Positions 27,100 to 61,346 of a stretch of DNA of 64,000 nucleotides are shown piece by piece (position 1 is the first letter of the stretch; each line of letters begins with the position of its first letter). The notes under the pieces are model-generated. The model was not told where the DNA came from. It worked only from the letters and a program-made list of their open reading frames with translations, and searched no databases. A program made the translations under genes and the position numbers. Source of the stretch: Ostrea edulis (taxonomy: Eukaryota); assembly GCF_947568905.1 (NCBI RefSeq), contig NC_079172.1, positions 51,894,001 through 51,958,000 on the forward strand. Reading direction: 5' to 3'.

Positions 27100-29290
27100 T
27101 AGAACATAGACTGAACTCTATGATTATGGATGTTGCCAATCACAGGCTCTTTAAACCACCACGGGTCATGCCGCTAGTTCCTTAAGCTCAAATTTTCAAA
27201 GGAATAGATGCCGTCAACATAAGCAACATTCTTCTTCATAAAAAAGTTCAGTCGTGTATTCCAACTTATTTCAAGTTCAAGTCTACACCACGTATTCCCT
27301 ACAAATATACTTCTACTATTGCATACAAACTTTCTAATTATAAACAAACTTTGCAGTGCCTAGATATAGACCATCTTATACGTAATCCACCTACGTGTTC
27401 TTGTTCTTCATTTTCTTTCAACTATAGTCCAGCTGGACATGTCATTACTGGTGATGTTGATATAGTTGAAAGTGAGGACCTCAAATCACTTATTCTAAAA
27501 GGCCCTAAATACAGAGAACCCCGGTCTTTCAATTGGCGACAGAACTTCATTTCTATTATGAATTCTGTCGAGGATTATGCCAGACAGTGGGCTAAATATG
27601 AAAAATAAGAACTTGATACATTGTCAGAATGGATTCAAAGTATAAGAGAAATATTCAAATCCCGCATTAGACATATGAAAACAAAAGTACGTACCATCTA
27701 TCCTTCTGTGTTTAGTAAACCAGAAGTGATAAAAAGAATTAGATAGGTTACACGAGGAATATGTTTTGGTTCCAGCTGACAAAGCTTGTAGCAACATTGT
27801 CTTTGTAAGGCTCATTATTACAATTGTATTTTAAACGAACTTGGCATTACTTCCACTTGGGTAATCGTACCTATACTCTAACTGCCATTTCAGAAGACGA
27901 AATTCTTCGAAACCATGCTTCAGTTTTAGACACATTTAATATCCCAGTTAATGGGTCAGATGAATATGATTGTCCGTACTTATATTGTATTCCTAAACTA
28001 CATGAAAACCCTTACAACCAAAGATACATTGCTGGATCCAGTAAATGTTCTACCAAGGTCCTCACGAAAATATTAACAGCTGTGAAGGACAAACTTCAAA
28101 CGTACTCTGCGACTGCATATGCTAGAAGTGATGTTAATCAAATGTGGATTCTAAAATTTTTTAAAGAACTTTTAGTAAACTTGAAATCACAAAACTTTTC
28201 TCAAATCAACAACATCAAAATGTATGACTTTTCAACTCTTTACACGACGATTTCTCACGATAAATTAAAGACTAGACTTTGTGACATCATAGACAGTTGC
28301 TTCTTCAGCAAAAATGGAAAACGTAAATATTCCTATCTTGTGATCAGTCATCCAAAAATTACTTTGTTAAGCGCCACTCTGATTCCACGATACTCTGAAG
28401 TTAAAATAAAGAATATGCTGGAGTTCCTCAGTTCCTTCGTGGTCTTTGGTGATCAGGACTTCCAACAGTATGTTGGAATACCCATGGACACAAATTGTGC
28501 TCCTTTGTTAGCTGACCTGTTTTTATATTCCTATGAATCATACTTTATTAAAAAACTTCTACGTGAGAAGTAAAAATCTCGTGCTGTGGCCTTCAATTCG
28601 ACATTTAGATATATCGACGATGTATTATCTATTGACAATAATAATTTGCATTCATATGTCGATTCAATATATCCCAGTAAACTCGAAATAAAAGACACCG
28701 CACAGTCGTCCACATCTGCTTCATACTTAGATATTTTGTTGAAAGTAGATATTAACGGCAAACAACTCAACTTTATGACAAACGGGATGATTTCAACTTC
28801 TCCACCGTCAACTTCCCATATTTATGTAGAAATATTCCATTATCGCCTCCATATGGTGTTTACATCTCTCAACTGATTCGATACGCAAGAGCTTGTACTG
28901 CGTATGACCAGTTTTTAAATCGAAGCAGGCTACTGACAAATAAGTTGATGGTGCAGAGGTTCCAACAGTCTCGTTTTAAAATAAGCATTTCGCAAATTCT
29001 ATGGTCGTTATAACGATCTGGTCTGCCAACACAACCTATCATTGGGTCAAATGCTGTCTGACATGTTGATTGTTAGGCTGTTCTTGGCACACTGATTTTG
29101 ACTACGGGTAAATCCGTTTGCCTGATCAAGATATAGGGCTCACGATGAGTGTGACAGGGGATGCTTACTCCTCCTAGGCACCTGATCCCACCTCTGGTAT
29201 ATCCAGGGGTCCGTTTTTGCCCAACTCTCTAGTTTGAATTGCTTATAAGAGTTATGAGATTGATCACTGTTCATTGTCTTCGCCTTTCAT
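27100..29290 (+). mobile_element. Penelope-like retroelement, 5'-truncated, frameshifted RT pseudogene with 3' terminal repeat
   Basis: ORF pieces with YCIPKLHENP, MYDFSTLYTTISHD, VGIPMDTNCAPLLADLFLYSYE, FRYIDDVLS; tail GGGGATGCTTACTCCTCCTAGGCACCTGATCCCACC...TTCAT shared with several fragments in the window. Clade (possibly Naiad/Chlamys) is an inference. Confidence 0.85.
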
Positions 29291-31254: not shown

Positions 31255-31480
31255 AATGTAAAACTTACACAGTACCAATTTTGATGCACCAGATGCGCAT
31301 TTCGACAACTAATGTCTCTTCAGTGATGCTAAACCGAAATGTTTAAAATCCGAAATAATGATAAACTTGCTAAAGCTACTTTAGGGAAAAACAGTCTGCC
31401 AAAAAGTGAAGTCAAATTCATCTAAGGATAAGAGCTTTGCATGAGAGAGATAATCCTTAAATTTGAAATGAATTTCTATG
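31255..31480 (-). mobile_element. Partial retrozyme-like unit
   Basis: Homologous to the first about 220 bp of the 56455-56927 repeat, includes one hammerhead. Confidence 0.7.
31286..31329 (-). ncRNA. Minimal type I hammerhead ribozyme (intact core, solitary)
   Basis: GCATCA CTGAAGA GACA TTAGT TGTC GAAA TGCGC ATC TGGTGC; only loop II differs. Confidence 0.8.
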
Positions 31481-46800: not shown

Positions 46801-49800
46801 ATATAATAACAAGTTTGTAAATACAACGTATCATTTTCAGTATATGTTTGCATTTGAATATGTTTATCAACCTGCATTTTTTAAAAAATATATGTGCTAG
46901 ATAAAGCTTAAAATATAAGTAAACCTATCAACAAGGGATGCTTACTCGTCCTAGGGACCTGTTCCCACCTCTGGTGTGTCCAGGGACCCGTGTTGCCCCT
47001 TTTATGAATTTCATATTCTTGATAGGATTTAAGAGATTAAAACTAGCTCTAAGGGCCTACACGTTTACTGTTATTTCGGATTTCAAAAATTTCGGTTGAG
47101 CATTACTGAAGATACATCATTTGTCGAAATGCGCATCTGGTGCATCAAAATTGCTACCGGAAAATTTTTACATTATGATCCCTGGGTCGAGGCTTCTGTT
47201 GGTGGACTTTTAGTCCCCGAGGGTCTCTACAGCGCAGTAGCTAAGTATTTTGTTACTAGCTTGAAAATACGAATGTATATTTAATTGCTGTGATTAAATT
47301 TAGAAATTCATTTCAAAATTAAGGATTATCTCCCTCGTGCTCTTATCCTTAGACGAATTTGGCTCCACTTTTTTGGCACTGTTTTTCCCTAAAATAGCTC
47401 TACAAGTTTACTGTTATTTCGGATTTCAAAAATTTCGGTTGAGCATCACTGAAGAGACATTATTTGTCAAAATGCGCATCTGGTGCATCAAAATTGGTAC
47501 CGTATAAGTTTTACTTTAAAACCTAGTATCACTTTTGTTATGGAAACTTCTGCCTCAGTTCGATAAACTGTAATGGAATTCATTTTAATAATATTCATTC
47601 TCGAGAATATCATCTGCATGTACTGTTTTGGCTCTGAGAGTTATTCCCTATGATTGTAAATTTCAAAATATGTATAGTGGAATGTCATGTTAGAAAATGT
47701 TTGTGTATGGCATCTGTGTTGCTAAGTTTTCATTCTTGTTTAAGGGGTGTTTTCCAATTTTTTTCATTTCGTATTATAAAAGGTTTTGACGCAAAACCAT
47801 GTTCTTGACTTTAACATTGCAATTAAGACCGGTTACATAAACATCAGTTACAAACATTACACAAATTGTTAAAGGAAGGAGATGAAAATAAAATATACAG
47901 TAATATGCACAGTTGGTTTAAAAATGAAAGGTGAAGATAACGAACAATGACCAATCTCATAACTCCTATAAGCAATACAAAATAGAGAGTTAAGCAAACA
48001 CGGAGCCCTGCATATACCAGAAGTAAGACCAGGTCCCTAGGAGGAGTAAGCATCACTTGTCAACCGGTCACGCCCGCCGTGAGCCCTATATCTTTAGTCA
48101 AAATCAGTGTGTCAAGAGCGGTCTAATAATCGGTATGTAACACGTCAGACAGCATTTGACCCCAAAACAGGTTATATTGATAATGTAGAACGTTTCAACG
48201 ACCATAGATTTTGAGTAATGCTGAGCACAAATGAAACTGTTGAAACCCCTGTAACATAAACTTGTTTGTCAGTAGCCTACCTCGATTTGAAAATTGACCA
48301 TACACAGAGGTAGCTCTTGCGTGTCGAATCAGTTGAGAGGTATAAACACCACATGCAGGTTATAATGGAATAATGCTACATACATATATATGGGAAGTTG
48401 AAGATAGAGAAGCCGAAATCATCCATTTTGTCATAAAGTTGAGTTGTTAGTTTGCCGTTAATATTTATTTTCAATAAAATATCTAAATACGAAGCAGATA
48501 TGGAGGACTCTGTGGTGTTCTTTATTGCGAGTTCAACATATGAATGAAAATGACCATTGTTAATAGATAAAACGGCGTCGATATATCTAAATATCGAGTT
48601 GAAGAAGGCCACAGCAAAAGATGGTTTTTCTCTTGGAGCTTTGAATAAACTCTGATTTTGAATAAGCATGCAGTTTATTCTAATAGTTATAACAAACCTC
48701 TCTGTGCATCCAACAGTCCTCTCCTCTTCTCAATTTCTACACACGACATTAGGTCCATTCCCTCCTGACACATGGTTGTTTCTCCCTCCATACAGTCACA
48801 GTACCTCTCTACCTTATAACTGCCATCAGTTGTCACGCAATACCCTCTATATAAGGATTCATCCTCAGATACCCTTAACCAATATATAGACAGGCATCAT
48901 TTATGACCGTCAAGAGTACTTTCAAACAGCTTGAAAAGAGCTATATATGATAAAGGTATAAGCCCCAAAACTTGTAAGAATTCATGTGAAATCATTAACA
49001 TTTAAATATATCTTTCTAAGTACTTCAATTCTTGCGAGACAATTGCATCCTAATATCTAAAGACAGTCTTGCACCTTTTCTTGTATTTCATAGTGACATT
49101 AAAATTTTTCAACCGATACCGTCATTTTTAGTATTTTTCTATCGAATGTTAATCATCTATAAGCCATACATGTAGTAACAGTATGAATCATGTTCTTAAT
49201 CTTTATTTGGCAAAATATGGTTTCAAAATGTGTACTTTTTCATCAAAATTTCAAATTGGTAGAAAATTGTGCATTCGTAGTGTTCTTGGAAGTTTTAGAA
49301 TTCTTCTATGAATTACACAAAAACTCTTCATTAAGATAAAACAAAAAATAAGAAACCTGAAAATTCATTTTAAGGGGCCAAACTAGTTATACAGCATACA
49401 GTCCTTTAAATTGATAGAAAACGATTAAATGAATGCATGTATACATAGGTGTGAACATCATTTATTCCAAAATGTAGCATATGAAATGTTTAAACATGAT
49501 ACATCCTCGTGATAAAATATCAAATAAGTAAAATATGCATGCCTGAATGATACATGTACATGCATATAATTTGGAAAATACAAAATCATGCCAATCTTAC
49601 CTCCATGATAAAGAGAATTCATTAGGTTGTTTTCCACCTTTCACATAAACAGTTCCGTCTCTTTTAGTGAAATCATTGTTTCTATTACCATCAAAAGTAC
49701 CACACAATCCTACAATATAAGTTATACCACACAATCCTACAATATAAGTTATACCACACAATCCTACAATATAAGTTATACCACACAATCCTATAATATA

Positions 49801-55500: not shown

Positions 55501-57129
55501 CTTTGGCACACCCAGGTTTGAACTCACAATCTTCTGGTTGCAAAGTGGAGGCACAAATCACTGGGATGCAGCAACCAGTCACCCGATTAATGGAGAGAGA
55601 TAAGGAAAGCTATTTGGACCATTAAATACAACTTCTGGATAAAATATAGATTGTGCAATAGTCCTAAACTACTGCATTCTGTAGCATGCAAGATTAGCAT
55701 ATAATTATACCCTGATTATTCCAAATATCATAGTCCTGCAGTAGACTTCACAACTTACCCTTTACAAGCTCGACAAATACAGTAACATTACATTGGTTAT
55801 TCTGATGTGCTTTGTCACAGAAAAGTCTCGGTGGCACAGTACTAGTAACATTGATATATACAGGTCCTGATCGTTCATATGTGGTTATATGTGTTTCACC
55901 AACAACCTGTAATAAAACAGTATTATGTAATATTGATCAGTATTTTGTAACAATATTTATAGGTAGGAAAACTCAGTACTGATGTGTCCAAATCTTGCGA
56001 CAATGTGTAGTATATGTTGACTTCCCTTTACTGGTCTGTGAACTCTTATTGTGTAAACAAGTCAATATCATGTAACATTGATCAACATCATGCAACACTA
56101 CTTGAATAGGTAGGGAAAATCAAAAGTGATGTGTTCAAAACTCGATGCCAAAAGGCAATATATACTGATTTCCCTTTAATAGTTTGTTAGCTCTTATTTT
56201 TCGTCATTTGCTATATCTAATAAATGATATTTTGATTCTCATTCAGGTTGTCTTGTTATAAATCATTTCAAGCAATAACAAGCTTCGGTGAGCTGTTTTA
56301 TTGAAGAAAAACAGGCTAAGACGTGAAATTGCCTTTGAGCTAATTCAGAAACCATCATATATATCGAGTTATCTAATTAATGTAGATATCACTCTTGTTA
56401 GGAGTTAAGAGAGGGTCAACCTATTTTCCTATTTTTCTCTTCTTTTGCCCTTTATGTAAAACTTATATGGTACAAATTTTGATCCACCAGATGCGCATTT
56501 CGACAAATAATGTCTCTTCAGTGATGCTCGACCGAAATCTTTGAAATCCGAAATAACAATAAACTTGCTAGAGCTATTATAGGGAAAAACAGAGTGCCAA
56601 AAAAAATGGAGTCAAATTTGTGTAAGGATAAGAGCTATGTATGGGTGATAATCCTTAATTTTGAAATGAATTTCTAAATTTTATCACAGCAATTAAATAT
56701 ACATCCGTATTTTCAAGCCAGTAACGAAGTACTTATGTACTGGGCTGTAGAGACCCTCGGGGACTAACAGTCCACCAGCAGAGGCCTCGACCCAGGGGTC
56801 ATAATGTAAAAATTATACGGTAGCAATTTTGATGCACCAGATGCGCATTTCGACAAATAATGTCTCTTCAGTGATGCTCAACCGAAATGTTTGAAATCCG
56901 AAATAACAATTAACTTGCTAGAGCTATTATTGCTCTCTTTCCCATCCCTCTCTACCTTTTTGCCCCTCCCCATCTCTCCTGCACACTTTCTTTCTTTCAT
57001 TTCCTACTCCCCATCTTTCCATCTTCTCACCGTTTTATTTCACTCTCCATTGCCCATCTTTTCCTCCACCTACCTCTTATCTTCCCCCCCTTTCCGTCCC
57101 TTTCTCTTCTCCCTAGCAGGCTCATTTAT

Positions 57130-57193
<64 letters not shown>

Positions 57194-60100
57194 CCCCTTT
57201 TCCTTCATTCTTCTTCCCCATCTATCCCTCCTACCATCCCGTTTTCCCATCTACCCCTTTCATTCATTTTCCAACCCTTTCCTTGACTTCATTTATATTC
57301 TTTCTGGTACCACCCATTTCCTTCATTTTACGCTCCCAATATCTCCCTACCCCCACCCACTTTCCTTCTCTTACCCATATTTCTTCGTTTTCCCCTCCCT
57401 ATTACTTTTCCTTCCCTTCCCACCTTCTTTCTCCCTCTTTTTGACATTTGTCCATTTCATTTGCTAATTAATGCAACTCTAATTGAAATTTTATGTAATT
57501 TTACTTTTGCATAATAACAATGTGATATTCGCAAAAAAGAAATGTTCAACATACATATATCATAATGATAATCTAATAATTAATGTATTTTTTCATGCAA
57601 TAAGCAGAAAATATTTGTTTTCTTAACCTTTTAATGAAAAAAGAACAATTTCATTGTAAACTGGGTATTTCAAAACGTTTTGTTAAAGATTTTTAGCATC
57701 TTTCATAGTTTTTACACTATCTGACACAGAGAGAAAGATATAAATGAATAAATTTGTCCAGGACTGCCACGCTTCATCAAAAGATTCCATTTTTTCAATT
57801 TTTATCGTTGTGTTTGGAAGATAACAATTCATTCGTAGAATTACATGTATTGTTTGCCCATTTGATATATGCTCATGCTATAAATAGAATACTTAATTTG
57901 CATAGCAAGAACACTGACTTAAAATGACATCCAAGTATAGAATATTTTTCAAAATATATAGCATAATATGGATCTTATCACAGCAGAAAATAACAAAATC
58001 ATCTGGCTAGTTATGCACTATTTCATATTATCATGAAAAAAGGAAGATAACGAACAGTTATCAATGATATAACACTTTTAAAAAATACGAAATATAGATA
58101 GGAACAAACACGGATACCTGGATATACCAGATGTGGGATCAGGTGCCATGGAGGAGTAAGCATTATTCGTAGTCAAACACATTGTGCGAAGAGCGGCCCA
58201 ACAATCGATATGATAAACATCAGACAACATTTGACCCAAAGATAGGTTGTATTGGCAAACTAAATCATTATAACGACATAACATTTGTGAAACACTGACT
58301 ATAAACGGGACTGTTGAAACTCCAGCAACATTAATTTGTTTGTTAGTAGTCTGCCTTGATTTAAAAACTGATCATACGCAGAACAATCTTTTGAAATCAC
58401 CCTGTTTGTCATAAAGTTGAGTTGTTAGTTTGCCGTTAATATTCATTTTCATTAAAATATCTAAGTAAGAAACAGGTATGGAGGACTGTGGTGTCTTTTA
58501 TCACGAGTTCATTGGGGTATATATAATCAACGTATGAATGAAAATGATTATTGCTAATAGATAAAACGTCGTCGATATATCTAAATGTCAAGTTGAAGGC
58601 CAGAACAAGATTATTTTTCTTCTCGTGTAGAAAGTTTTTGAAAAAAAACTCTGCTTCATATGAATATAAAAACAGGTCAACTAACAAAGGAGCACAATTC
58701 GTGCCTATGGGAATTCCAACTGTTGGAAGACCTGATAACCAAAGACTACGAAAATATCGTCAATGAGAAACTCCAGCATATTTCTATTTCAATTTCAGAG
58801 TTTTTGTGCCTGGAATCGATCACTAGATATAGATATTTCTTTTTCTATTTTTCTTAAAGAAGCAACTGTATATGATGCCAAAAAGTCTAGTCTTTAATTT
58901 ATCGTGAGGAATGGTCGTGTAAAGTGTTGAAAAGTCATGCGTTGATGTTGTTAATCTGAGTGAAGTTTTTCAATTTCAAATTTACTAAAAGTTTTTAATT
59001 TCTTAAGAAGCCTTATTTCATTTACAACACTTCTGGCGTATAATGTGGCACAGTATGTTTGAAGTATCTCCTTCACAGCTGTTGATATTTTTACGAGGAG
59101 CGACGATAGGAGCTTGGTAGGACATTTACTCGATCCAGGAATGTATCTTTGTTTGTAGGGTTTTTTGTGAAGTTTAGGAATCCAGTATAGGTACGGTAAC
59201 TCATTAATGAAAGGTAAAGAAAACTAACAGTGATCAATCTCGTAACTCCTATAATCAGTACAAAATAAAGAGTTGGGCAAACACGGACCCCTGGAGATAC
59301 CATCCATCCATCCCAATGACTGCGATATTAAATATGTTTAAATCTGAAGCATGATTTTGAAGATTTTCATCTTTTGAAAGGGTAGTTGGAGTATAAGTAC
59401 GATTACCAGATGTGGAATCCATGCCAAGTTTGATTCGTTTAAGTTTCATTATCACAGAATGTAAATCAATTTGTATCTTTTATTTCAGTTAATGTAAAAA
59501 AAAAAAGAAGATTTTTTTAAATTCATGATTTATTCGAAACTCAAACAATTGAACTCTATCTTTAGTGAAATGATGAGGTAGAGTAAAGTATTCATTACAC
59601 AAATTGAAGATTCCATTCCAACGGGCTTTTTTGGTGATTCTTCTTTGTTATCTTTTATAATTTCTTTGAAGTTTTATGCACTCAGTTGAGAAAAAACGTT
59701 GCATATTTTCTCTAAAAGATTTTTCTGTCGTTTGATATTAATATGAAGGTCTGCACTTGCAAACTATATCAAGGCATCCAAACTTGCATCTAGAGACTTC
59801 ACTACTACCTGCATGTTTCATCTGCTTCCATAAAAAAAACATTGTCATTAGGTTTCTGAAATGTGCCTCCGTGGCCGAGTGGTTAGAGCATTGCGCTCAA
59901 AATCACACGGCCTCTCACCTCTGTCGGCGCGGGTTCGAATCCAGCTCGTGCCGGTAAGTGAGAAAGTTTCCCAGTTTACTTTCGGAAGGTCGGTGGTCTC
60001 TTCCCAGGTACATTGTATCTGGGTTCTCTCTTCCACCAATAAAAACTGGGCGCCACCAGATAACTGAAAAATTGTTGAGTGTGGCGGAAAACATCAATCA

Positions 60101-61346
60101 ATCTGAAATGTGCACATCCAGATTAACCTATGATGTAATATCCGATATTTATATAAAACTACCTTATCAAAATTGTATGGAACAACCGGAAATGCATCGT
60201 CGGAATTCACGGGCTTTCTCTCAGTGTATTATAACACAGACAAAACTGGTGAGTTTGCACGATACTGAAATTAAAGAAGAATTTACAAATACAACTTATT
60301 ATTGCATCAATTGTTGTTTACCGTGTTGTAAGGCCGCTCTTTACGAAAACTCGATCAAGATATAAGGCTCACGGCGGATTTGACCGGACAACAGGGGAAG
60401 GTTACTCTTCCCAGGCACCTGATCCCACATCTAGTGTTTCAAGGAGTCCGTTTTGTCGGACTCTAAATTTTGTATTCTTTATCGAATTTATGAATCTGAT
60501 TTTGCTGTTCTTTTCATTTTTAAATGAATGACCATGCTGATGAATCAAAAGCCTTTTCAAAGTCAATAAGGAGGAGATTTGGAATATTCTTCTCTTCTGT
60601 AATTTACATGTCATTAATACAGTGTAGTTCTAATATTTTCAGCAAGATTTCTACCATTTATAAATCCTGATGGTAAATTATTTGGTATAATTAGCTGGTG
60701 TTTTTTATTCTAAGCATGTGCAATAGTGCTTGAAGCAATTCTTTATACAGTATTCAACAAACCGTTTCCATCATACCTGGACTTTTGCAATGAATGCTTC
60801 ACTGTCTCTACTTGAACCTCTCATAGCGGAACAGTTTCCGGGCAGACAGGGAGTCACGGAACATTTGATCTGAAATTTATGTTTTGTTCTGATTTCATTT
60901 GGTTGACTATATTTTCATATGAAAAGTGAGTAGATTGTGCTTTTATTCTATCGCACAACATCACGATCCATCCAAATAATTGTGACCCAGTTATATAAAA
61001 GTTTAGTATATCTGACAGTTAACTTGACATGAACTAATTTATACGGTATAAACACTGTTAACTACAAGTAGACCCTAGCTGTCAATTCAAGAGCGCCATG
61101 TATGATATGGGTCTAATTTTGTTTCAATGAAGAGTTAAATGTTTAGAGATTTGAAATGTTTTTCTTTCAAATTCTAATTCACGTGTAAAAAAAAAAAACC
61201 ATGAAAAATATTCAACCGATTTGTTTCAGTTTGAAGTAAAAGAAAAGAAGAAGAAGAAACCTCTTCTGATTCAATTGACAACGTTACTAGAGCTTGTTTT
61301 TCCTTTTTCAAATATTCAGTACATTGCAATTGGTTTAATATAAAAT
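34859..61346 (-). CDS. VWDE: Gene 2 (spliced, 5' end outside window): von Willebrand factor D and EGF domain-containing (VWDE-like) type I membrane protein with LamG/ConA-like domain and long cytoplasmic tail
   Basis: 26 exons chain in frame with consistent phases. VWD hallmarks CSSINDPHMTTFD, CNRRAACNCAV, GLCGTFDGNRNNDF, SWRV; WPTPSNITE and CINDIQ; EGF CPNSCTDNGNCNGGFCVCAEPWIGDDC; LamG-like exon; TM helix then CRRRKKKKR stop-transfer. Symbol is family-level only, orthology not shown. Confidence 0.88.
34987..35160 (-). CDS. Gene 2 cytoplasmic repeat exon, type B2
   Basis: 174 nt phase 2-2; LQASGTKEYLTEHDSTL...ESVQ...GRIYR. Confidence 0.8.
35272..35409 (-). CDS. Gene 2 cytoplasmic repeat exon, type A3
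   Basis: 138 nt phase 2-2; QVQLEPSQIIYETNGKSAFV...ISKPGVVYR. Confidence 0.8.
35628..35798 (-). CDS. Gene 2 cytoplasmic repeat exon, type B1
   Basis: 171 nt phase 2-2; LKADGTREYLTEQDSRL...ESVQ...SRVYR. Confidence 0.8.
35949..36089 (-). CDS. Gene 2 cytoplasmic repeat exon, type A2
   Basis: 141 nt phase 2-2; QVELESQKIKQEVYGKSGFL...VIFYKPGGVVY. Confidence 0.8.
36306..36446 (-). CDS. Gene 2 cytoplasmic repeat exon, type A1
   Basis: 141 nt phase 2-2; QVELDKSQMKHV...SAIFYKPGVVYR. Confidence 0.8.
36899..38767 (-). CDS. Gene 2 large cytoplasmic exon (low complexity, S/E/K/Q-rich)
   Basis: ttatttctaag|GTAT, CAG|GTACAG; 1869 nt phase 2-2; corresponds to track ORF 36874..38739. Confidence 0.85.
38893..39078 (-). 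CDS. Gene 2 exon, juxtamembrane cytoplasmic
   Basis: gtttttccacag|GTG, CAG|GTAGTG; CRRRKKKKRFVRL...LNPVYW...; 186 nt phase 2-2. Confidence 0.85.
39088..40369 (+). mobile_element. HINE-like element with nested MITE (39234-39580) and SINE (39959-40190)
   Basis: AACAAGAG...CACCTGAG start; GGACGACG...AGGTCATCTG...GTGACCTAAAA end. Confidence 0.7.
39959..40190 (+). mobile_element. SINE-like dispersed repeat with (AATC)n tail, copy 1
   Basis: Shares CCCGTGGG...GGGTTAGAATAGGTC...GTCGTAAGAGGCGAC with 45371 and 61941 copies. Confidence 0.75.
40529..40667 (-). CDS. Gene 2 exon, stalk and transmembrane helix
   Basis: atgtctatcag|AAC, AGG|GTAAGT; EPTTTVPPFVPQCKEASLLRTDAAIISISVVSGSLFSAVIFICLLIG. Confidence 0.88.
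41225..42152 (+). mobile_element. Two tandem Penelope-like 3' fragments (about 41225-41670 and 41820-42152) separated by a Helentron-like piece
   Basis: Near-identity to 28870-29290 (CTATGGTCGTTATAACGATCT..., GGGCTCACG..., GGCACCTGATCCCA). Confidence 0.8.
42533..43174 (-). CDS. Gene 2 exon, laminin G / concanavalin A-like domain
   Basis: ttttatttctag|TTG, GAG|GTAATG; 642 nt phase 1-1; AVVLDGNQYLSLG...ACFGDVEKSTFGITITF...FSNGG...GYVMWF...W...HVEMSWSLQNGLQLNID...FVIGG. Confidence 0.88.
43739..43853 (-). CDS. Gene 2 exon
   Basis: actttttcag|AGT, AAG|GTAAGA; SDICEIGGNCFVSGFFNPFNVSEVCDITRSKCQWSTLQ. Confidence 0.9.
43867..44170. repeat. 77-bp tandem repeat x4 abutting an exon acceptor
   Basis: Starts at 43867, 43944, 44021, 44098. 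Confidence 0.9.
44418..44618 (-). CDS. Gene 2 exon
   Basis: ctgttgcag|GTA, AGG|GTAAAA; VNLESVPEVTTNKAEFFNSQTVTCLI...AVSNDG...YNSYCDRCNETGCRRR. Confidence 0.9.
45081..45271 (-). CDS. Gene 2 exon, second half of EGF-like domain
   Basis: cctttacag|GAT, AAT|GTAAAT; GFCVCAEPWIGDDCS...PCD...GENFADTENLTCHY. Confidence 0.9.
45371..45640 (+). mobile_element. SINE-like dispersed repeat, copy 2
   Basis: Same start motif, GATAAAGATCCCTCCCTGCTCAAAGG, AATC tail. Confidence 0.75.
45799..45985 (-). CDS. Gene 2 exon, first half of EGF-like domain
   Basis: gaaatgcag|CTT, GGG|GTAGGA; LTDGTDWAKESLDNLLQEC...ICPNSCTDNGNCNG. Confidence 0.9.
46110..46265 (-). CDS. Gene 2 exon (probable GC donor)
   Basis: aatatacag|GAT, CAG|GCATAT; DPQWPTPSNITEDIALKLCHDF...CINDIQ. 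Confidence 0.85.
46431..46543 (-). CDS. Gene 2 exon
   Basis: attgcag|GAC, CCG|GTATAT; GRKRVTEDLIRDAESPPTRCESIRPPEQFQHEPEYRQP. Confidence 0.8.
46720..47035 (+). mobile_element. Degenerate Penelope-like 3' fragment
   Basis: CAACAGTCTCGTTTAAAGTCAGCATT..., GGGATGCTTACTCGTCCTAGGGACCTGTTCCCACC. Confidence 0.7.
47100..47143 (+). ncRNA. Hammerhead ribozyme motif, helix II closing pair mutated
   Basis: GCATTA CTGAAGA TACATCATTTGTC GAAA TGCGC ATC TGGTGC; G10.1 replaced by T. Confidence 0.7.
47443..47486 (+). ncRNA. Hammerhead ribozyme motif, catalytic G12 mutated
   Basis: GCATCA CTGAAGA GACATTATTTGTC AAAA TGCGC ATC TGGTGC; GAAA box changed to AAAA. Confidence 0.7.
47922..48662 (-). mobile_element. 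Penelope-like RT C-terminus plus 3' tail
   Basis: Track ORF 48376..48669 FRYIDAVLSINNGHFHSYV...; tail at 47922-48130. Confidence 0.8.
48698..48873 (-). CDS. Gene 2 exon
   Basis: attggttaag|GGTA, GAG|GTTTGT; VSEDESLYRGYCVTTDGSYKVERYCDCMEGETTMCQEGMDLMSC...DAQR. Confidence 0.85.
49601..49709 (-). CDS. Gene 2 exon, end of VWD domain (acceptor embedded in 27-bp minisatellite)
   Basis: ttatattgtag|GATTG, GAG|GTAAGA; GLCGTFDGNRNNDFTKRDGTVYVKGGKQPNEFSLSWR. Confidence 0.9.
49700..50872. repeat. 27-bp (with 29-bp variants) minisatellite derived from the intron/exon junction, about 43 copies
   Basis: Minus-strand unit TATAACTTATATTGTAG|GATTGTGTGG equals the acceptor plus first 10 nt of exon 49601-49709. 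Confidence 0.95.
51098..51390. repeat. 36-bp minisatellite, about 8 diverged copies
   Basis: Unit ACAGCTGATCTACACAGATGTAGAGAGGATTATTTT. Confidence 0.85.
51733..52226. mobile_element. Kolobok-type MITE, TTAA target duplication
   Basis: TIR AGGGACTGGTTCACGATTTT / AAAATCGTGAATCAGTCCTT, TTAA at 51729-51732 and 52227-52230. Confidence 0.8.
53087..53201 (-). CDS. Gene 2 exon, VWD domain
   Basis: ccttttttgtag|ATA, AAG|GTAAAG; IILPTGAKVIVMNGWVILGRRFLNVKVVASTLDYNNTE. Confidence 0.9.
53393..53605 (-). CDS. Gene 2 exon, VWD domain
   Basis: attttccag|GTA, GAG|GTTTAT; VRTFYRKCNRRAACNCAVVVRSGNDVILVDVC...GTEVIRMSGGKTYE. Confidence 0.9.
54082..54145 (-). CDS. Gene 2 exon, VWD domain
   Basis: ttatattcttag|GTAT, GAG|GTATTC; YYDNYLEGEFILYRHKSLPYE. 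Confidence 0.9.
54387..54629. repeat. 80-bp tandem triplication of exon 3' end plus donor site
   Basis: Units start 54387, 54467, 54547; each holds ATCCTCATATGACAACATTTGATAGAA + (G/A)TAAGG on minus strand. Confidence 0.95.
54599..54675 (-). CDS. Gene 2 exon, start of VWD domain
   Basis: ctacatcag|GTG, AAA|GTAAGG; VTVVDGDKIAVCSSINDPHMTTFDR. Confidence 0.9.
54991..55223 (-). CDS. Gene 2 exon (GC donor)
   Basis: gctttacag|GAA, ends AAG|GCAAGT; GRETKCPGSRMPVSQVVF...SIDSLKDRDQTRNIQLYVTTPNTTKQFSTVK. Confidence 0.85.
55759..55906 (-). CDS. Gene 2 exon
   Basis: ttttattacag|GTT, AGG|GTAAGT; VVGETHITTYERSGPVYINVTSTVPPRLFCDKAHQNNQCNVTVFVELVK. Confidence 0.85.
56484..56527 (-). ncRNA. Minimal type I hammerhead ribozyme (intact core), 350 nt downstream of the 56834-56877 copy
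   Basis: Same motif; only the terminal helix I pair is mismatched (TGGTGG). Confidence 0.85.
56834..56877 (-). ncRNA. Minimal type I hammerhead ribozyme (intact core)
   Basis: Minus strand GCATCA CTGAAGA GACA TTATT TGTC GAAA TGCGC ATC/TGGTGC: helix I GCATCA:TGGTGC, CUGANGA and GAAA boxes, 4-bp helix II, palindromic helix III ATGCGCAT, AUC cleavage triplet. Confidence 0.85.
56930..57440. repeat. About 500-bp polypyrimidine/polypurine low-complexity tract
   Basis: Almost G-free C/T-rich plus strand containing (CT)n. Confidence 0.85.
58035..59445 (-). mobile_element. Rearranged Penelope-like RT fragments and two 3' tails
   Basis: GIPIGTNCAPLLVDLFLYSYE, FRYIDDVLS, HDFSTLYTTIPHD, GNRTYTPTTLSKDE; tails at about 58035-58200 and 59205-59300. 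Confidence 0.8.
59865..60101 (+). mobile_element. Full-length tRNA-derived SINE with (ATCA)n tail and target-site duplication
   Basis: A box TGGCCGAGTGG, B box GGTTCGAATCC, V/Meta-like central domain (GGTCGGTGGT...TTCCACCAATAAAAACTG), TSD TCTGAAATGT at 59855-59864 and 60102-60111. Confidence 0.85.
60355..60500 (+). mobile_element. Penelope-like 3' tail fragment
   Basis: GATCAAGATATAAGGCTCACGGCGG...GGCACCTGATCCCAC. Confidence 0.7.
60777..60869 (-). CDS. Gene 2 exon
   Basis: aaatttcag|ATC acceptor, CAG|GTATGA donor, IKCSVTPCLPGNCSAMRGSSRDSEAFIAKVQ, phase 0-0. Confidence 0.8.
61261..61346 (-). CDS. Gene 2 exon (most 5' found in window)
   Basis: tatcttttacag|ATTTT acceptor, GAG|GTTTCT donor, phase 1-0, DFILNQLQCTEYLKKEKQALVTLSIESEE; frame fits next exon but no diagnostic motif. 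Confidence 0.5.

What the first reader, a model, noticed from the sequence alone, without database searches (positions are those of the whole stretch)
56484..56877. Intact tandem hammerhead ribozyme pair on the sense strand of a VWDE-like intron
Seen: two 44-nt type I hammerhead motifs exactly 350 nt apart on the minus strand, both with complete CUGAAGA/GAAA cores, helix I GCAUCA:UGGUG, 4-bp helix II and a palindromic helix III (AUGCGCAU) before an AUC triplet. Established: minimal hammerheads with short palindromic helix III occur in Penelope-like elements and metazoan non-LTR retrozymes and cleave as dimers, releasing monomers that can circularise. Inference: they sit in the gene 2 intron 55907-60776 in pre-mRNA orientation, so host transcription could cut after 56840 and 56490, release a 350-nt RNA (56839 to 56490), and sever the intron co-transcriptionally, linking a retrozyme life cycle to host-gene processing.
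Basis: partly seen in the sequence, partly recalled or inferred. Interest (0 to 1): 0.75.

Follow-up and report, generated by a model that had tools for sequence, protein, structure and literature searches.

The report
Ordinary intronic hammerhead retrozyme copy
The two self-cutting hammerhead RNA motifs are real, but they belong to one ordinary copy of a small non-coding mobile repeat present thousands of times in this bivalve genome, and nothing ties it to the gene whose intron it landed in.

Summary
Two complete minimal type I hammerhead motifs lie 350 nt apart on the minus strand, with cut sites after 56840 and 56490. They are not a special pair. Both belong to one 477-nt insertion (56454-56930, 1.37 units) of a 350-nt non-coding repeat. 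That repeat carries about 10,000 exact-core hammerhead motifs across this 895-Mb genome, and this window alone holds three insertions, in both orientations. Copies have a fixed 3' end 34-40 nt past the cut site, truncated or preferred 5' ends, no poly(A) and no coding capacity. This fits a Penelope-dependent non-LTR retrozyme, a kind already described in mussel, coral and amphibians. The sense-strand position in an intron of a VWD-domain gene is supported. However, the nearest tandem paralogue (exons 94-96% identical) has a 686-nt intron that lacks the whole 4.2-kb block holding the element. The insertion is therefore late and paralogue-specific, with no sign of host use. Read-through transcription followed by ribozyme cutting is the published general model, not a new link. 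Rfam models do not detect the motif. This scan had already met the same family in other windows of this genome. Low interest.

The parts
56454..56930 (-). Whole retrozyme insertion, 477 nt, equal to 1.37 units of a 350-nt repeat. It is 3.6% diverged from the family majority sequence.
   Evidence: The 3' end ...TTTTACAT at 56454 is the family's fixed end. The 5' end at 56930 falls in the family's preferred 5' cluster.
56834..56877 (-). Upstream minimal type I hammerhead. Predicted cut between 56840 and 56839. Helix I has 6 bp.
56484..56527 (-). Downstream minimal type I hammerhead. Predicted cut between 56490 and 56489. Helix I has 5 bp because of a private C-to-G change at 56484.
56490..56839 (-). 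Predicted 350-nt monomer released by the two cuts. GC content is 37.7% and there is no open frame longer than 65 codons, even in a 3-unit concatemer.
56804..56930 (-). Upstream 127-nt direct repeat (pseudo-LTR-like overlap) holding hammerhead 1.
   Evidence: 94% identical to 56454-56580. All 8 differences are private to one arm.
56454..56580 (-). Downstream 127-nt direct repeat holding hammerhead 2 and the fixed 3' terminus.
55907..60776 (-). Host intron (4,870 nt) of a VWD-domain gene. The element lies in it in sense orientation.
   Evidence: Splice sites. The flanking exons 60869-60777 and 55906-55757 are conserved in two paralogues. A VWD exon lies at 49740-49600.
56406..60579 (.). 4.17-kb block absent from the nearest paralogue's intron, where only 31 nt lie between the aligned ends. 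It holds the retrozyme, a unique purine-rich stretch and old RT-bearing repeat fragments.
47057..47518 (+). Second insertion of the same family, about 1.3 units, antisense to the gene. One exact-core hammerhead at 47106-47137.
31255..31478 (-). Third insertion of the same family, a 5'-truncated 0.64 unit. One exact-core hammerhead at 31292-31323.

Best explanation
This is one ordinary, fairly young insertion of a high-copy, non-coding, 350-nt non-LTR retrozyme of a bivalve genome, that is, a non-autonomous Penelope-like-element (PLE) dependent repeat. It landed by chance in sense orientation in an intron of one paralogue of a VWD-domain gene.

Shown here: the motif, the family, its insertion anatomy (fixed 3' end, 5' truncation, copies longer than one unit that regenerate two hammerheads), the intronic setting, and its absence from the paralogue.

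Inferred from published work on the class: when RNA polymerase reads through the copy, the two hammerheads pair through their AUGCGCAU palindromes and cut after C17. [quoted passage not shown] A host RtcB-type ligase can circularise it, and a PLE reverse transcriptase copies such RNA into new sites.

None of 28 copies ends at a cut site, and the 3' end always lies 34-40 nt beyond it. The template that gets reverse-transcribed is therefore not the cut linear monomer. It is either a circle read for more than one round or an uncut RNA longer than one unit. For the host gene the element is most likely neutral cargo.
For: Motif.

Family size: 5,067 + 5,003 exact-core motifs in the genome against 0 for the reversed pattern, and 5,359 first-look candidates for the 477-nt query.

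Anatomy in 28 independent loci: every 3' end lies at unit position 124-130 (...TTTTACAT, sometimes with T, TA or TAT added). 5' ends are scattered, lengths are 455-856 nt, there is no poly(A), and flanks are unrelated. 5' ends cluster at unit positions 339-351 in 8 of 28 loci (p 6e-6). ACAT is enriched 4.5-fold at the 5' junction (11 observed against 2.4 expected, p 5e-5), which suggests priming by microhomology with the element's 3' end.

Composition: GC 37.7% and no ORF.

Co-resident PLEs: the genome holds canonical PLEs with intact RT plus C-terminal GIY-YIG ORFs of 787 and 973 aa. A hammerhead-like motif with a palindromic helix III lies tens of nt before their 3' ends, which is the same end architecture.

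Dimer mode: a two-motif cofold forms the 8-bp intermolecular helix III at -25.3 kcal/mol. Enforcing it in cis within the 477-nt RNA costs only 0.5 kcal/mol.

Late insertion: the paralogue's intron is 686 nt and aligns with both ends of the window's intron, leaving out 56406-60579. The 8 differences between the two 127-nt arms are all private to one arm.

Published class description: PMC7229834 (mussel, about 5,000 hammerheads in 350-390-bp repeats, abundant circRNA), PMC7761336, PMC8557442, bioRxiv 10.64898/2026.07.22.740005.
Against: No RNA evidence of any kind was obtained, so cleavage and circularisation are not shown for the family in this species or for this copy.

No Rfam hammerhead model matches.

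The 350-nt RNA is not predicted to be unusually structured (z = -0.03), unlike the 'highly self-paired' circles described for published retrozymes.

The autonomous partner was not identified. The two intact PLE families examined share no sequence with the element and insert into (TA)n, which the retrozyme does not.

The locus sample came from the best matches to a 477-nt query, so it is biased towards copies longer than one unit.
Confidence: 0.88

Rival explanations
1. One reading: the sense-strand pair is functionally coupled to the host gene. Cutting of the nascent intron at 56840 and 56490 would modulate splicing or expression of this VWD gene, and the host gene would be a dedicated driver of the retrozyme.
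For: The element lies in sense orientation inside a supported intron. Both cores are intact. Published retrozymes appear to lack their own promoters and are thought to rely on read-through transcription (PMC7761336).
Against: The nearest paralogue lacks the whole 4.17-kb block, so the element is not a conserved part of the gene. The family has about 10,000 motifs, and the same gene region also carries an antisense copy. Only 1 substitution falls in the 86 hammerhead positions where about 3 are expected, which is not significant. In Xenopus, retrozymes are depleted from introns, which suggests cost rather than use (bioRxiv 10.64898/2026.07.22.740005). From general knowledge, untested here: ribozyme-cut introns can still be spliced because exons stay tethered to the polymerase.
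Confidence: 0.04
2. Passive by-product: whenever the host gene is transcribed, this copy is cut out of the pre-mRNA and adds a little 350-nt linear or circular RNA to the family pool, without consequence for the gene.
For: Same as above for orientation and motif integrity. The cis-dimer helix III is energetically accessible in the 477-nt RNA. This is the general model in PMC7761336.
Against: In free folds of the 477-nt RNA the helix I strands pair elsewhere. Minimal motifs of this type cleave poorly as monomers (PMC7229834). Expression of the host gene is unknown.
Confidence: 0.35
3. The pair is the pseudo-LTR or 3' end of the RT-bearing repeat that lies just upstream on the same strand (RT-like fragments at 59479-58026), not a separate non-autonomous element.
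For: RT-like fragments lie 1.15 kb upstream in the same orientation. The same RT family is seen within 1.5 kb of 13 of 27 other retrozyme loci, with direct junctions at L064:6763 and at window 47020/47057.
Against: That RT family has its own fixed 3' end (...CACCTTTCAT), reached near 58030. The 770 nt between it and the retrozyme are unique in the genome. Most retrozyme copies have unrelated flanks. The RT family is extremely abundant (at least 26,385 first-look candidates), so much of the adjacency is expected by chance. Its copies are old (63-76% protein identity) while the retrozyme family is young (about 96-98% to majority).
Confidence: 0.04
4. A DNA-level tandem duplication or satellite that only happens to contain hammerhead-like strings, with no RNA-mediated mobility.
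For: Head-to-tail repeats, with some loci holding 2-3 units. No target-site duplication beyond chance.
Against: Thousands of dispersed copies on all chromosomes have one precise 3' end and variable 5' ends. The full catalytic core and all three helices are kept. The reversed-pattern control gives 0.
Confidence: 0.02

Closest known systems
Metazoan non-LTR retrozymes (Cervera and de la Pena 2020, PMC7229834), especially the Mytilus galloprovincialis family
   Same: Type I hammerhead in head-to-tail repeats of about 350 bp. Thousands of copies (about 5,000 motifs in mussel, about 10,000 here). Low GC and non-coding. Co-resident PLEs.
   Different: The hammerhead here is the minimal, palindromic-helix-III type that should need dimers, as in amphibian retrozymes and PLEs, whereas invertebrate retrozymes were reported to cleave as monomers. 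The predicted RNA is not unusually self-paired. Most sampled copies are 1.3-2.4 units with a fixed 3' end rather than long arrays. circRNA has not been shown here.
Penelope-like element pseudo-LTRs with minimal hammerheads (Cervera and de la Pena 2014 and Lunse et al. 2017, as cited in PMC7761336; Craig et al. 2021, PMC8557442)
   Same: Minimal type I motif. Partial tandem arrangement giving terminal direct repeats. 5' truncation and a fixed 3' end. The hammerhead lies tens of nt before the 3' terminus, as in this genome's own 787-aa PLE.
   Different: No RT or endonuclease ORF. No sequence similarity to the two intact PLE families examined. Flanks are not (TA)n.
Non-autonomous PLE derivatives in vertebrates (bioRxiv 10.64898/2026.07.22.740005)
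   Same: Retrozymes interpreted as non-autonomous PLE sequences, with monomer, dimer and multimer copies dispersed in the genome.
   Different: That work found similarity between retrozymes and the pLTRs of specific PLEs. Here such a partner was looked for and not found.
Conserved intronic hammerheads of amniotes (HH9/HH10; de la Pena and Garcia-Robles 2010, cited in PMC7761336)
   Same: A hammerhead on the sense strand of an intron of a protein-coding gene.
   Different: Those are single-copy and conserved across orthologues. This one is a repeat copy absent from the nearest paralogue.

Membership tests
Hammerhead ribozyme, type I (minimal, PLE-type variant) | Catalytic core C3-U4-G5-A6-N7-G8-A9 and G12-A13-A14 in the right order around three helices, with a cleavage triplet N-U-H | tested here: met
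   CUGAAGA ... GAA ... AUC in both motifs. The pattern gives 4 hits against 0 in 100 shuffles.
Hammerhead ribozyme, type I (minimal, PLE-type variant) | Helices I and II formed by Watson-Crick or GU pairs, with helix I open (type I) | tested here: met
   Helix I has 6 bp (upstream motif) and 5 bp (downstream motif). Helix II has 4 bp closed by UUAUU. Both are kept in the MFE of the isolated motifs.
Hammerhead ribozyme, type I (minimal, PLE-type variant) | Helix III: a stable hairpin in canonical motifs, or a short palindrome that pairs between two motifs in minimal variants | tested here: met
   AUGCGCAU is not paired as helix III in the monomer MFE. The cofold of the two motifs forms the 8-bp helix at -25.3 kcal/mol. 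This meets the criterion for the minimal, dimer-type variant only.
Hammerhead ribozyme, type I (minimal, PLE-type variant) | Match to a curated Rfam hammerhead covariance model | tested here: not met
   No hammerhead family at gathering score or at E<=10 on 56300-57100.
Hammerhead ribozyme, type I (minimal, PLE-type variant) | Site-specific self-cleavage | not testable with these tools
   Needs in vitro transcription or RNA end mapping.
Metazoan non-LTR retrozyme | Type I hammerhead within head-to-tail repeats of about 150-400 bp, dispersed in many copies | tested here: met
   350-nt unit, 1.3-2.4 units per sampled locus, about 10,000 motifs.
Metazoan non-LTR retrozyme | Non-coding, GC below 50%, with no LTR, PBS or PPT and no poly(A) | tested here: met
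   GC 37.7% and longest stop-free stretch 65 codons. 3' ends lack poly(A). PBS and PPT were not specifically searched.
Metazoan non-LTR retrozyme | Expressed as linear and circular RNA of unit length | not testable with these tools
Metazoan non-LTR retrozyme | Stable, highly self-paired predicted RNA | tested here: not met
   MFE is -73.3 kcal/mol against a shuffle mean of -73.1, z = -0.03.
Metazoan non-LTR retrozyme | Co-occurrence with autonomous PLEs | tested here: met
   At least 1,102 GIY-YIG candidates. Intact ORFs of 787 and 973 aa carry RT plus a C-terminal GIY-YIG domain.
Non-autonomous Penelope-like element | Fixed 3' end, frequent 5' truncation, and partial tandems giving pseudo-LTRs | tested here: met
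   28 of 28 loci end at unit position 124-130, 5' ends are scattered with a cluster at 339-351, and terminal direct repeats are present.
Non-autonomous Penelope-like element | 3' region shared with an autonomous PLE of the same genome | tested here: not met
   No similarity to the 35 GIY-YIG-centred loci beyond three incidental retrozyme copies. Only two PLE families were examined in detail, so the test is incomplete.
Conserved host intronic hammerhead (HH9/HH10-like) | Retained at the same intronic position in related genes | tested here: not met
   The paralogue at +57 kb has a 686-nt intron collinear with both intron ends and lacks 56406-60579. The second paralogue's intron is 199 nt.

The most novel reading that the evidence does not exclude
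The sense-strand pair makes this one paralogue's intron self-cleaving. Its splicing or output would then differ from the retrozyme-free paralogue 57 kb away, giving a natural paired test of whether a retrozyme insertion alters host-gene processing.
Probability: 0.04. Interest if true: 0.55.

Novelty: new member of a known kind. Interest (0 to 1): 0.15.

Why it matters
It matters little as a discovery. The element is one more copy of a known class, the family had already been met elsewhere in this genome by the scan, and the proposed link to the host gene is the standard read-through model.

Two things are modestly useful.

First, the family's insertion anatomy constrains the template. The 3' end always lies 34-40 nt past the cut site, there is a preferred 5' end about 105 nt before the upstream cut, and no copy ends at a cut site. 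The cut linear monomer is therefore not the template that is reverse-transcribed, which bears on how Penelope-type enzymes might copy circles.

Second, the retrozyme-bearing and retrozyme-free paralogues sit side by side. They would be a clean natural pair for anyone wishing to measure what an intronic sense-strand retrozyme does to a host transcript.

Tried and rejected
- Rfam scans gave no hammerhead hit, only chance snoRNA-like matches at E above 1.
No reads were laid and no other route was tried.
- Extra constraint on the hammerhead across copies: 97.8% against 96.1% majority identity inside and outside the motif. The difference is too small to argue selection.
- Viroid-like stability of the 350-nt RNA: z = -0.03, rejected.
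- Target-site duplications: the longest flank matches are no better than mismatched-locus controls. Only the short ACAT microhomology stands out.
- Autonomous partner via GIY-YIG (PF01541) loci. Two intact canonical PLE families were characterised. Neither shares sequence with the retrozyme and both target (TA)n, so the partner is left open.
- The hyper-abundant old RT repeat as partner. It is enriched near retrozyme loci and shows a few direct junctions. However, its abundance explains much of this and its copies are far older, so no conclusion was drawn.
I did not try to obtain those letters another way.
- From the first 100 listed motifs, about one locus in ten shows two or more exact-core motifs spaced about 350 nt apart. 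This is a hand count, so only a rough figure.

Full report
OBSERVATION

Reading 57100-56300 on the minus strand shows the same 44-nt layout twice, at 56877-56834 and at 56527-56484. The layout is: helix I 5' strand GCAUCA, core CUGAAGA, a 4-bp helix II (GACA/UGUC) closed by UUAUU, GAA, the palindrome AUGCGCAU, C17, and helix I 3' strand UGGUGC. In the downstream copy the 3' strand reads UGGUGG, which costs the outermost pair. C17 falls at 56840 and 56490, so the cuts would release 56839-56490, exactly 350 nt. A pattern made of the core plus helix III finds four matches in the window and none in 100 shuffles.

Rfam 15 gives no hammerhead match at gathering score nor at E<=10 on the local 801 nt. 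The reason is visible in the fold. The isolated motif keeps helices I and II but has no stable helix III, and a closed helix III is what the curated models expect. That last point rests on my own knowledge of those models.

WHAT IT BELONGS TO

The two motifs sit in two 127-nt direct repeats (56804-56930 and 56454-56580, 94% identical, spacing 350). The locus is therefore 1.37 units of a 350-nt repeat, spanning 56454-56930.

The 477-nt stretch has 5,359 first-look candidates in the window's own genome (895 Mb, 52 contigs). The 40 candidates scored are 92-95% identical and lie on all large contigs. The exact-core motif occurs 5,067 times forward and 5,003 times reverse, against 0 for the reversed pattern.

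The window itself holds three insertions:
- 56454-56930 (-), the reported copy.
- 47057-47518 (+), about 1.3 units.
- 31255-31478 (-), 0.64 unit.

Eighty unit-length alignments show copies about 96-98% identical to the majority base, at 97.8% inside the motif and 96.1% outside. This is a young, homogeneous family with no clear extra constraint on the ribozyme. The window copy differs from the majority at 17 of 477 positions (3.6%). Only one of these touches a hammerhead, at 56484 on the edge of helix I. The eight differences between its two arms are each private to one arm, as expected if the arms were identical at insertion. The unit has 37.7% GC and no open frame above 65 codons.

INSERTION ANATOMY

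I examined 28 independent loci.
- Every copy ends at unit position 124-130 (...TTTTACAT, sometimes with T, TA or TAT added), 34-40 nt past the cut site. Unrelated sequence follows, with no poly(A).
- 5' ends are scattered over the unit, and lengths run from 455 to 856 nt.
- Eight of 28 5' ends fall at unit positions 339-351 (p 6e-6). The window copy is one of these. A preferred 'full-length' form of 477-491 nt with two hammerheads therefore exists.
- Target-site duplications are no longer than in mismatched controls.
- ACAT, the element's own 3' end, is 4.5-fold enriched at the 5' junction (11 observed against 2.4 expected, p 5e-5). This suggests microhomology at priming.

A fixed 3' end, 5' truncation and partial tandems are the signature of Penelope-like elements (PMC8557442). 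No copy begins or ends at a cut site. The ribozyme-cut linear monomer is therefore not what gets reverse-transcribed. The template must be a circle read for more than one round, or an uncut RNA longer than one unit. This is inference. The sample is also biased towards long copies, because it came from the best matches to a 477-nt query.

PENELOPE-LIKE ELEMENTS IN THE SAME GENOME

A GIY-YIG search finds at least 1,102 candidates. Two canonical families were examined.
[quoted passage not shown] Its copies are near-identical and occur in tandems of period 3,717 and in inverted pairs. A hammerhead-like motif with an AGCGCU palindrome lies about 150 nt after the ORF and about 55 nt before the 3' end. 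The element inserts into (TA)n and has an optional tail of about 45 nt.
- The other has a 973-aa ORF and also ends in (TA)n.

The end architecture (hammerhead, then tens of nt, then the 3' terminus) is the same as in the retrozyme. There is no sequence similarity, though, and the retrozyme's flanks are not (TA)n. The mobilising partner remains unidentified.

HOW THE RIBOZYMES WOULD WORK

Cofolding the two motifs gives the 8-bp intermolecular helix III at -25.3 kcal/mol. In the whole 477-nt RNA, enforcing that helix in cis costs 0.5 kcal/mol relative to the free optimum. In those folds, however, the helix I strands pair elsewhere. The 350-nt RNA is not unusually stable (z = -0.03).

The literature says that minimal type I motifs with a weak helix III cleave as dimers. 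It also says retrozymes seem to lack promoters, are read through by host polymerases, self-cut co-transcriptionally, and are circularised by a host ligase (PMC7761336, PMC7229834).

HOST GENE

On the minus strand there is a canonical acceptor at 55907/55906 and a donor at 60777/60776. An exon at 49740-49600 matches the end of the VWD domain (PF00094, E 9.5e-5, above the curated cut-off).

Both exons flanking the intron are conserved, in the same order and strand, in two tandem paralogues on the same contig:
- One lies 57 kb away, with exons 94-96% identical and an intron of 686 nt.
- One lies 120 kb away on the other side, with exons 51-55% identical and an intron of 199 nt.

The 686-nt intron aligns with window 55907-56405 (83% identity) and with about 60580-60776 (80% identity), leaving 31 nt in between. 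Window 56406-60579 (4.17 kb) is therefore specific to this paralogue. That block holds the retrozyme at its very edge, a 770-nt stretch unique in the genome, and old RT-bearing repeat fragments. The hammerhead pair is not a conserved feature of the gene.

An antisense copy of the same family lies in another intron-like interval of the same gene region. In Xenopus, retrozymes are depleted from introns (bioRxiv 10.64898/2026.07.22.740005), which points to cost rather than use.

WHAT COULD NOT BE DONE

Expression, cleavage ends and circles are therefore untested, and I did not look for another route.

COMPARISON AND VERDICT

The element meets the defining features of a metazoan non-LTR retrozyme and of a non-autonomous Penelope-like element wherever these could be tested. 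The exceptions are a curated-model hit, predicted high self-pairing, and an identified partner.

It differs from the published invertebrate examples in using the dimer-type minimal hammerhead, and in occurring mostly as 1.3-2.4-unit copies with a fixed 3' end. I found no paper describing this family in this species group.

Other windows of this genome had already yielded the same family to this scan, and my independent tests agree with those notes.

The finding is a correct observation of an ordinary thing: a new member of a known kind, of low interest.

Noticed in passing
window 59479-58026 (-), 48729-47980 (-); 3' modules at 29154-29219 (+), 46925-47020 (+), 60388-60450 (+): A hyper-abundant, old RT-bearing repeat with at least 26,385 first-look candidates and copies 63-76% identical at protein level. 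It has a precise 3' end ...CACCTTTCAT. The Atlas neighbours carry RVT_1 and HTH_animal and are mostly molluscan. Its class (Penelope-like or other) was not settled.
   Followed up: partly
window 47020/47057; L064:6763; L002 and L012 3' flanks: There are direct junctions between that RT repeat and retrozyme copies. In some the repeat runs straight into a 5'-truncated retrozyme. In others an inverted repeat 3' end lies 5-12 nt from the retrozyme 3' end. The repeat is present within 1.5 kb of 13 of 27 retrozyme loci. This could reflect template switching or a shared target preference, but part of it is expected from the repeat's abundance.
   Followed up: partly
L061-L063, L065 (own genome, contigs C1, C2, C10, C9): A canonical Penelope-like family with an intact 787-aa RT plus C-terminal GIY-YIG ORF. 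Copies are near-identical and occur in tandems of period 3,717 and in inverted pairs. It inserts into (TA)n, has an optional tail of about 45 nt, and carries a hammerhead-like core with an AGCGCU palindrome but a poor helix II. It looks recently active.
   Followed up: partly
window 56931-57700: A 770-nt purine-rich stretch (minus strand) between the retrozyme and the RT repeat, with degenerate 21-33-nt repeats and a (CT)n run at 57174-57191. It has no other copy in the genome.
   Followed up: partly
own genome C9:51829207-51829645 and C9:52007118-52008046 (window is C9:51894001-51958000): Two tandem paralogues of the VWD-domain gene. The intron homologous to window 55907-60776 (4,870 nt) is 199 nt and 686 nt in them. 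This gives a side-by-side pair of the gene with and without the repeat load.
   Followed up: partly
own genome C9:68.87-69.64 Mb (L002, L003 and listed hits): Retrozyme copies, GIY-YIG hits and another repeat recur with identical flanks at spacings of about 147-179 kb. This indicates a large tandem segmental repeat of at least five units.
   Followed up: no
window 56599-56606 (minus-strand sense): A run of eight T inside the unit on the sense strand (seven in the family majority). It would act as a Pol III terminator, so full-unit transcripts are unlikely to come from Pol III.
   Followed up: no
window 55959-56198: Two roughly 147-nt-spaced direct repeats in the intron belong to another dispersed repeat family. 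One part of that family forms a long array of about 20-nt period on C2:64.62 Mb.
   Followed up: no
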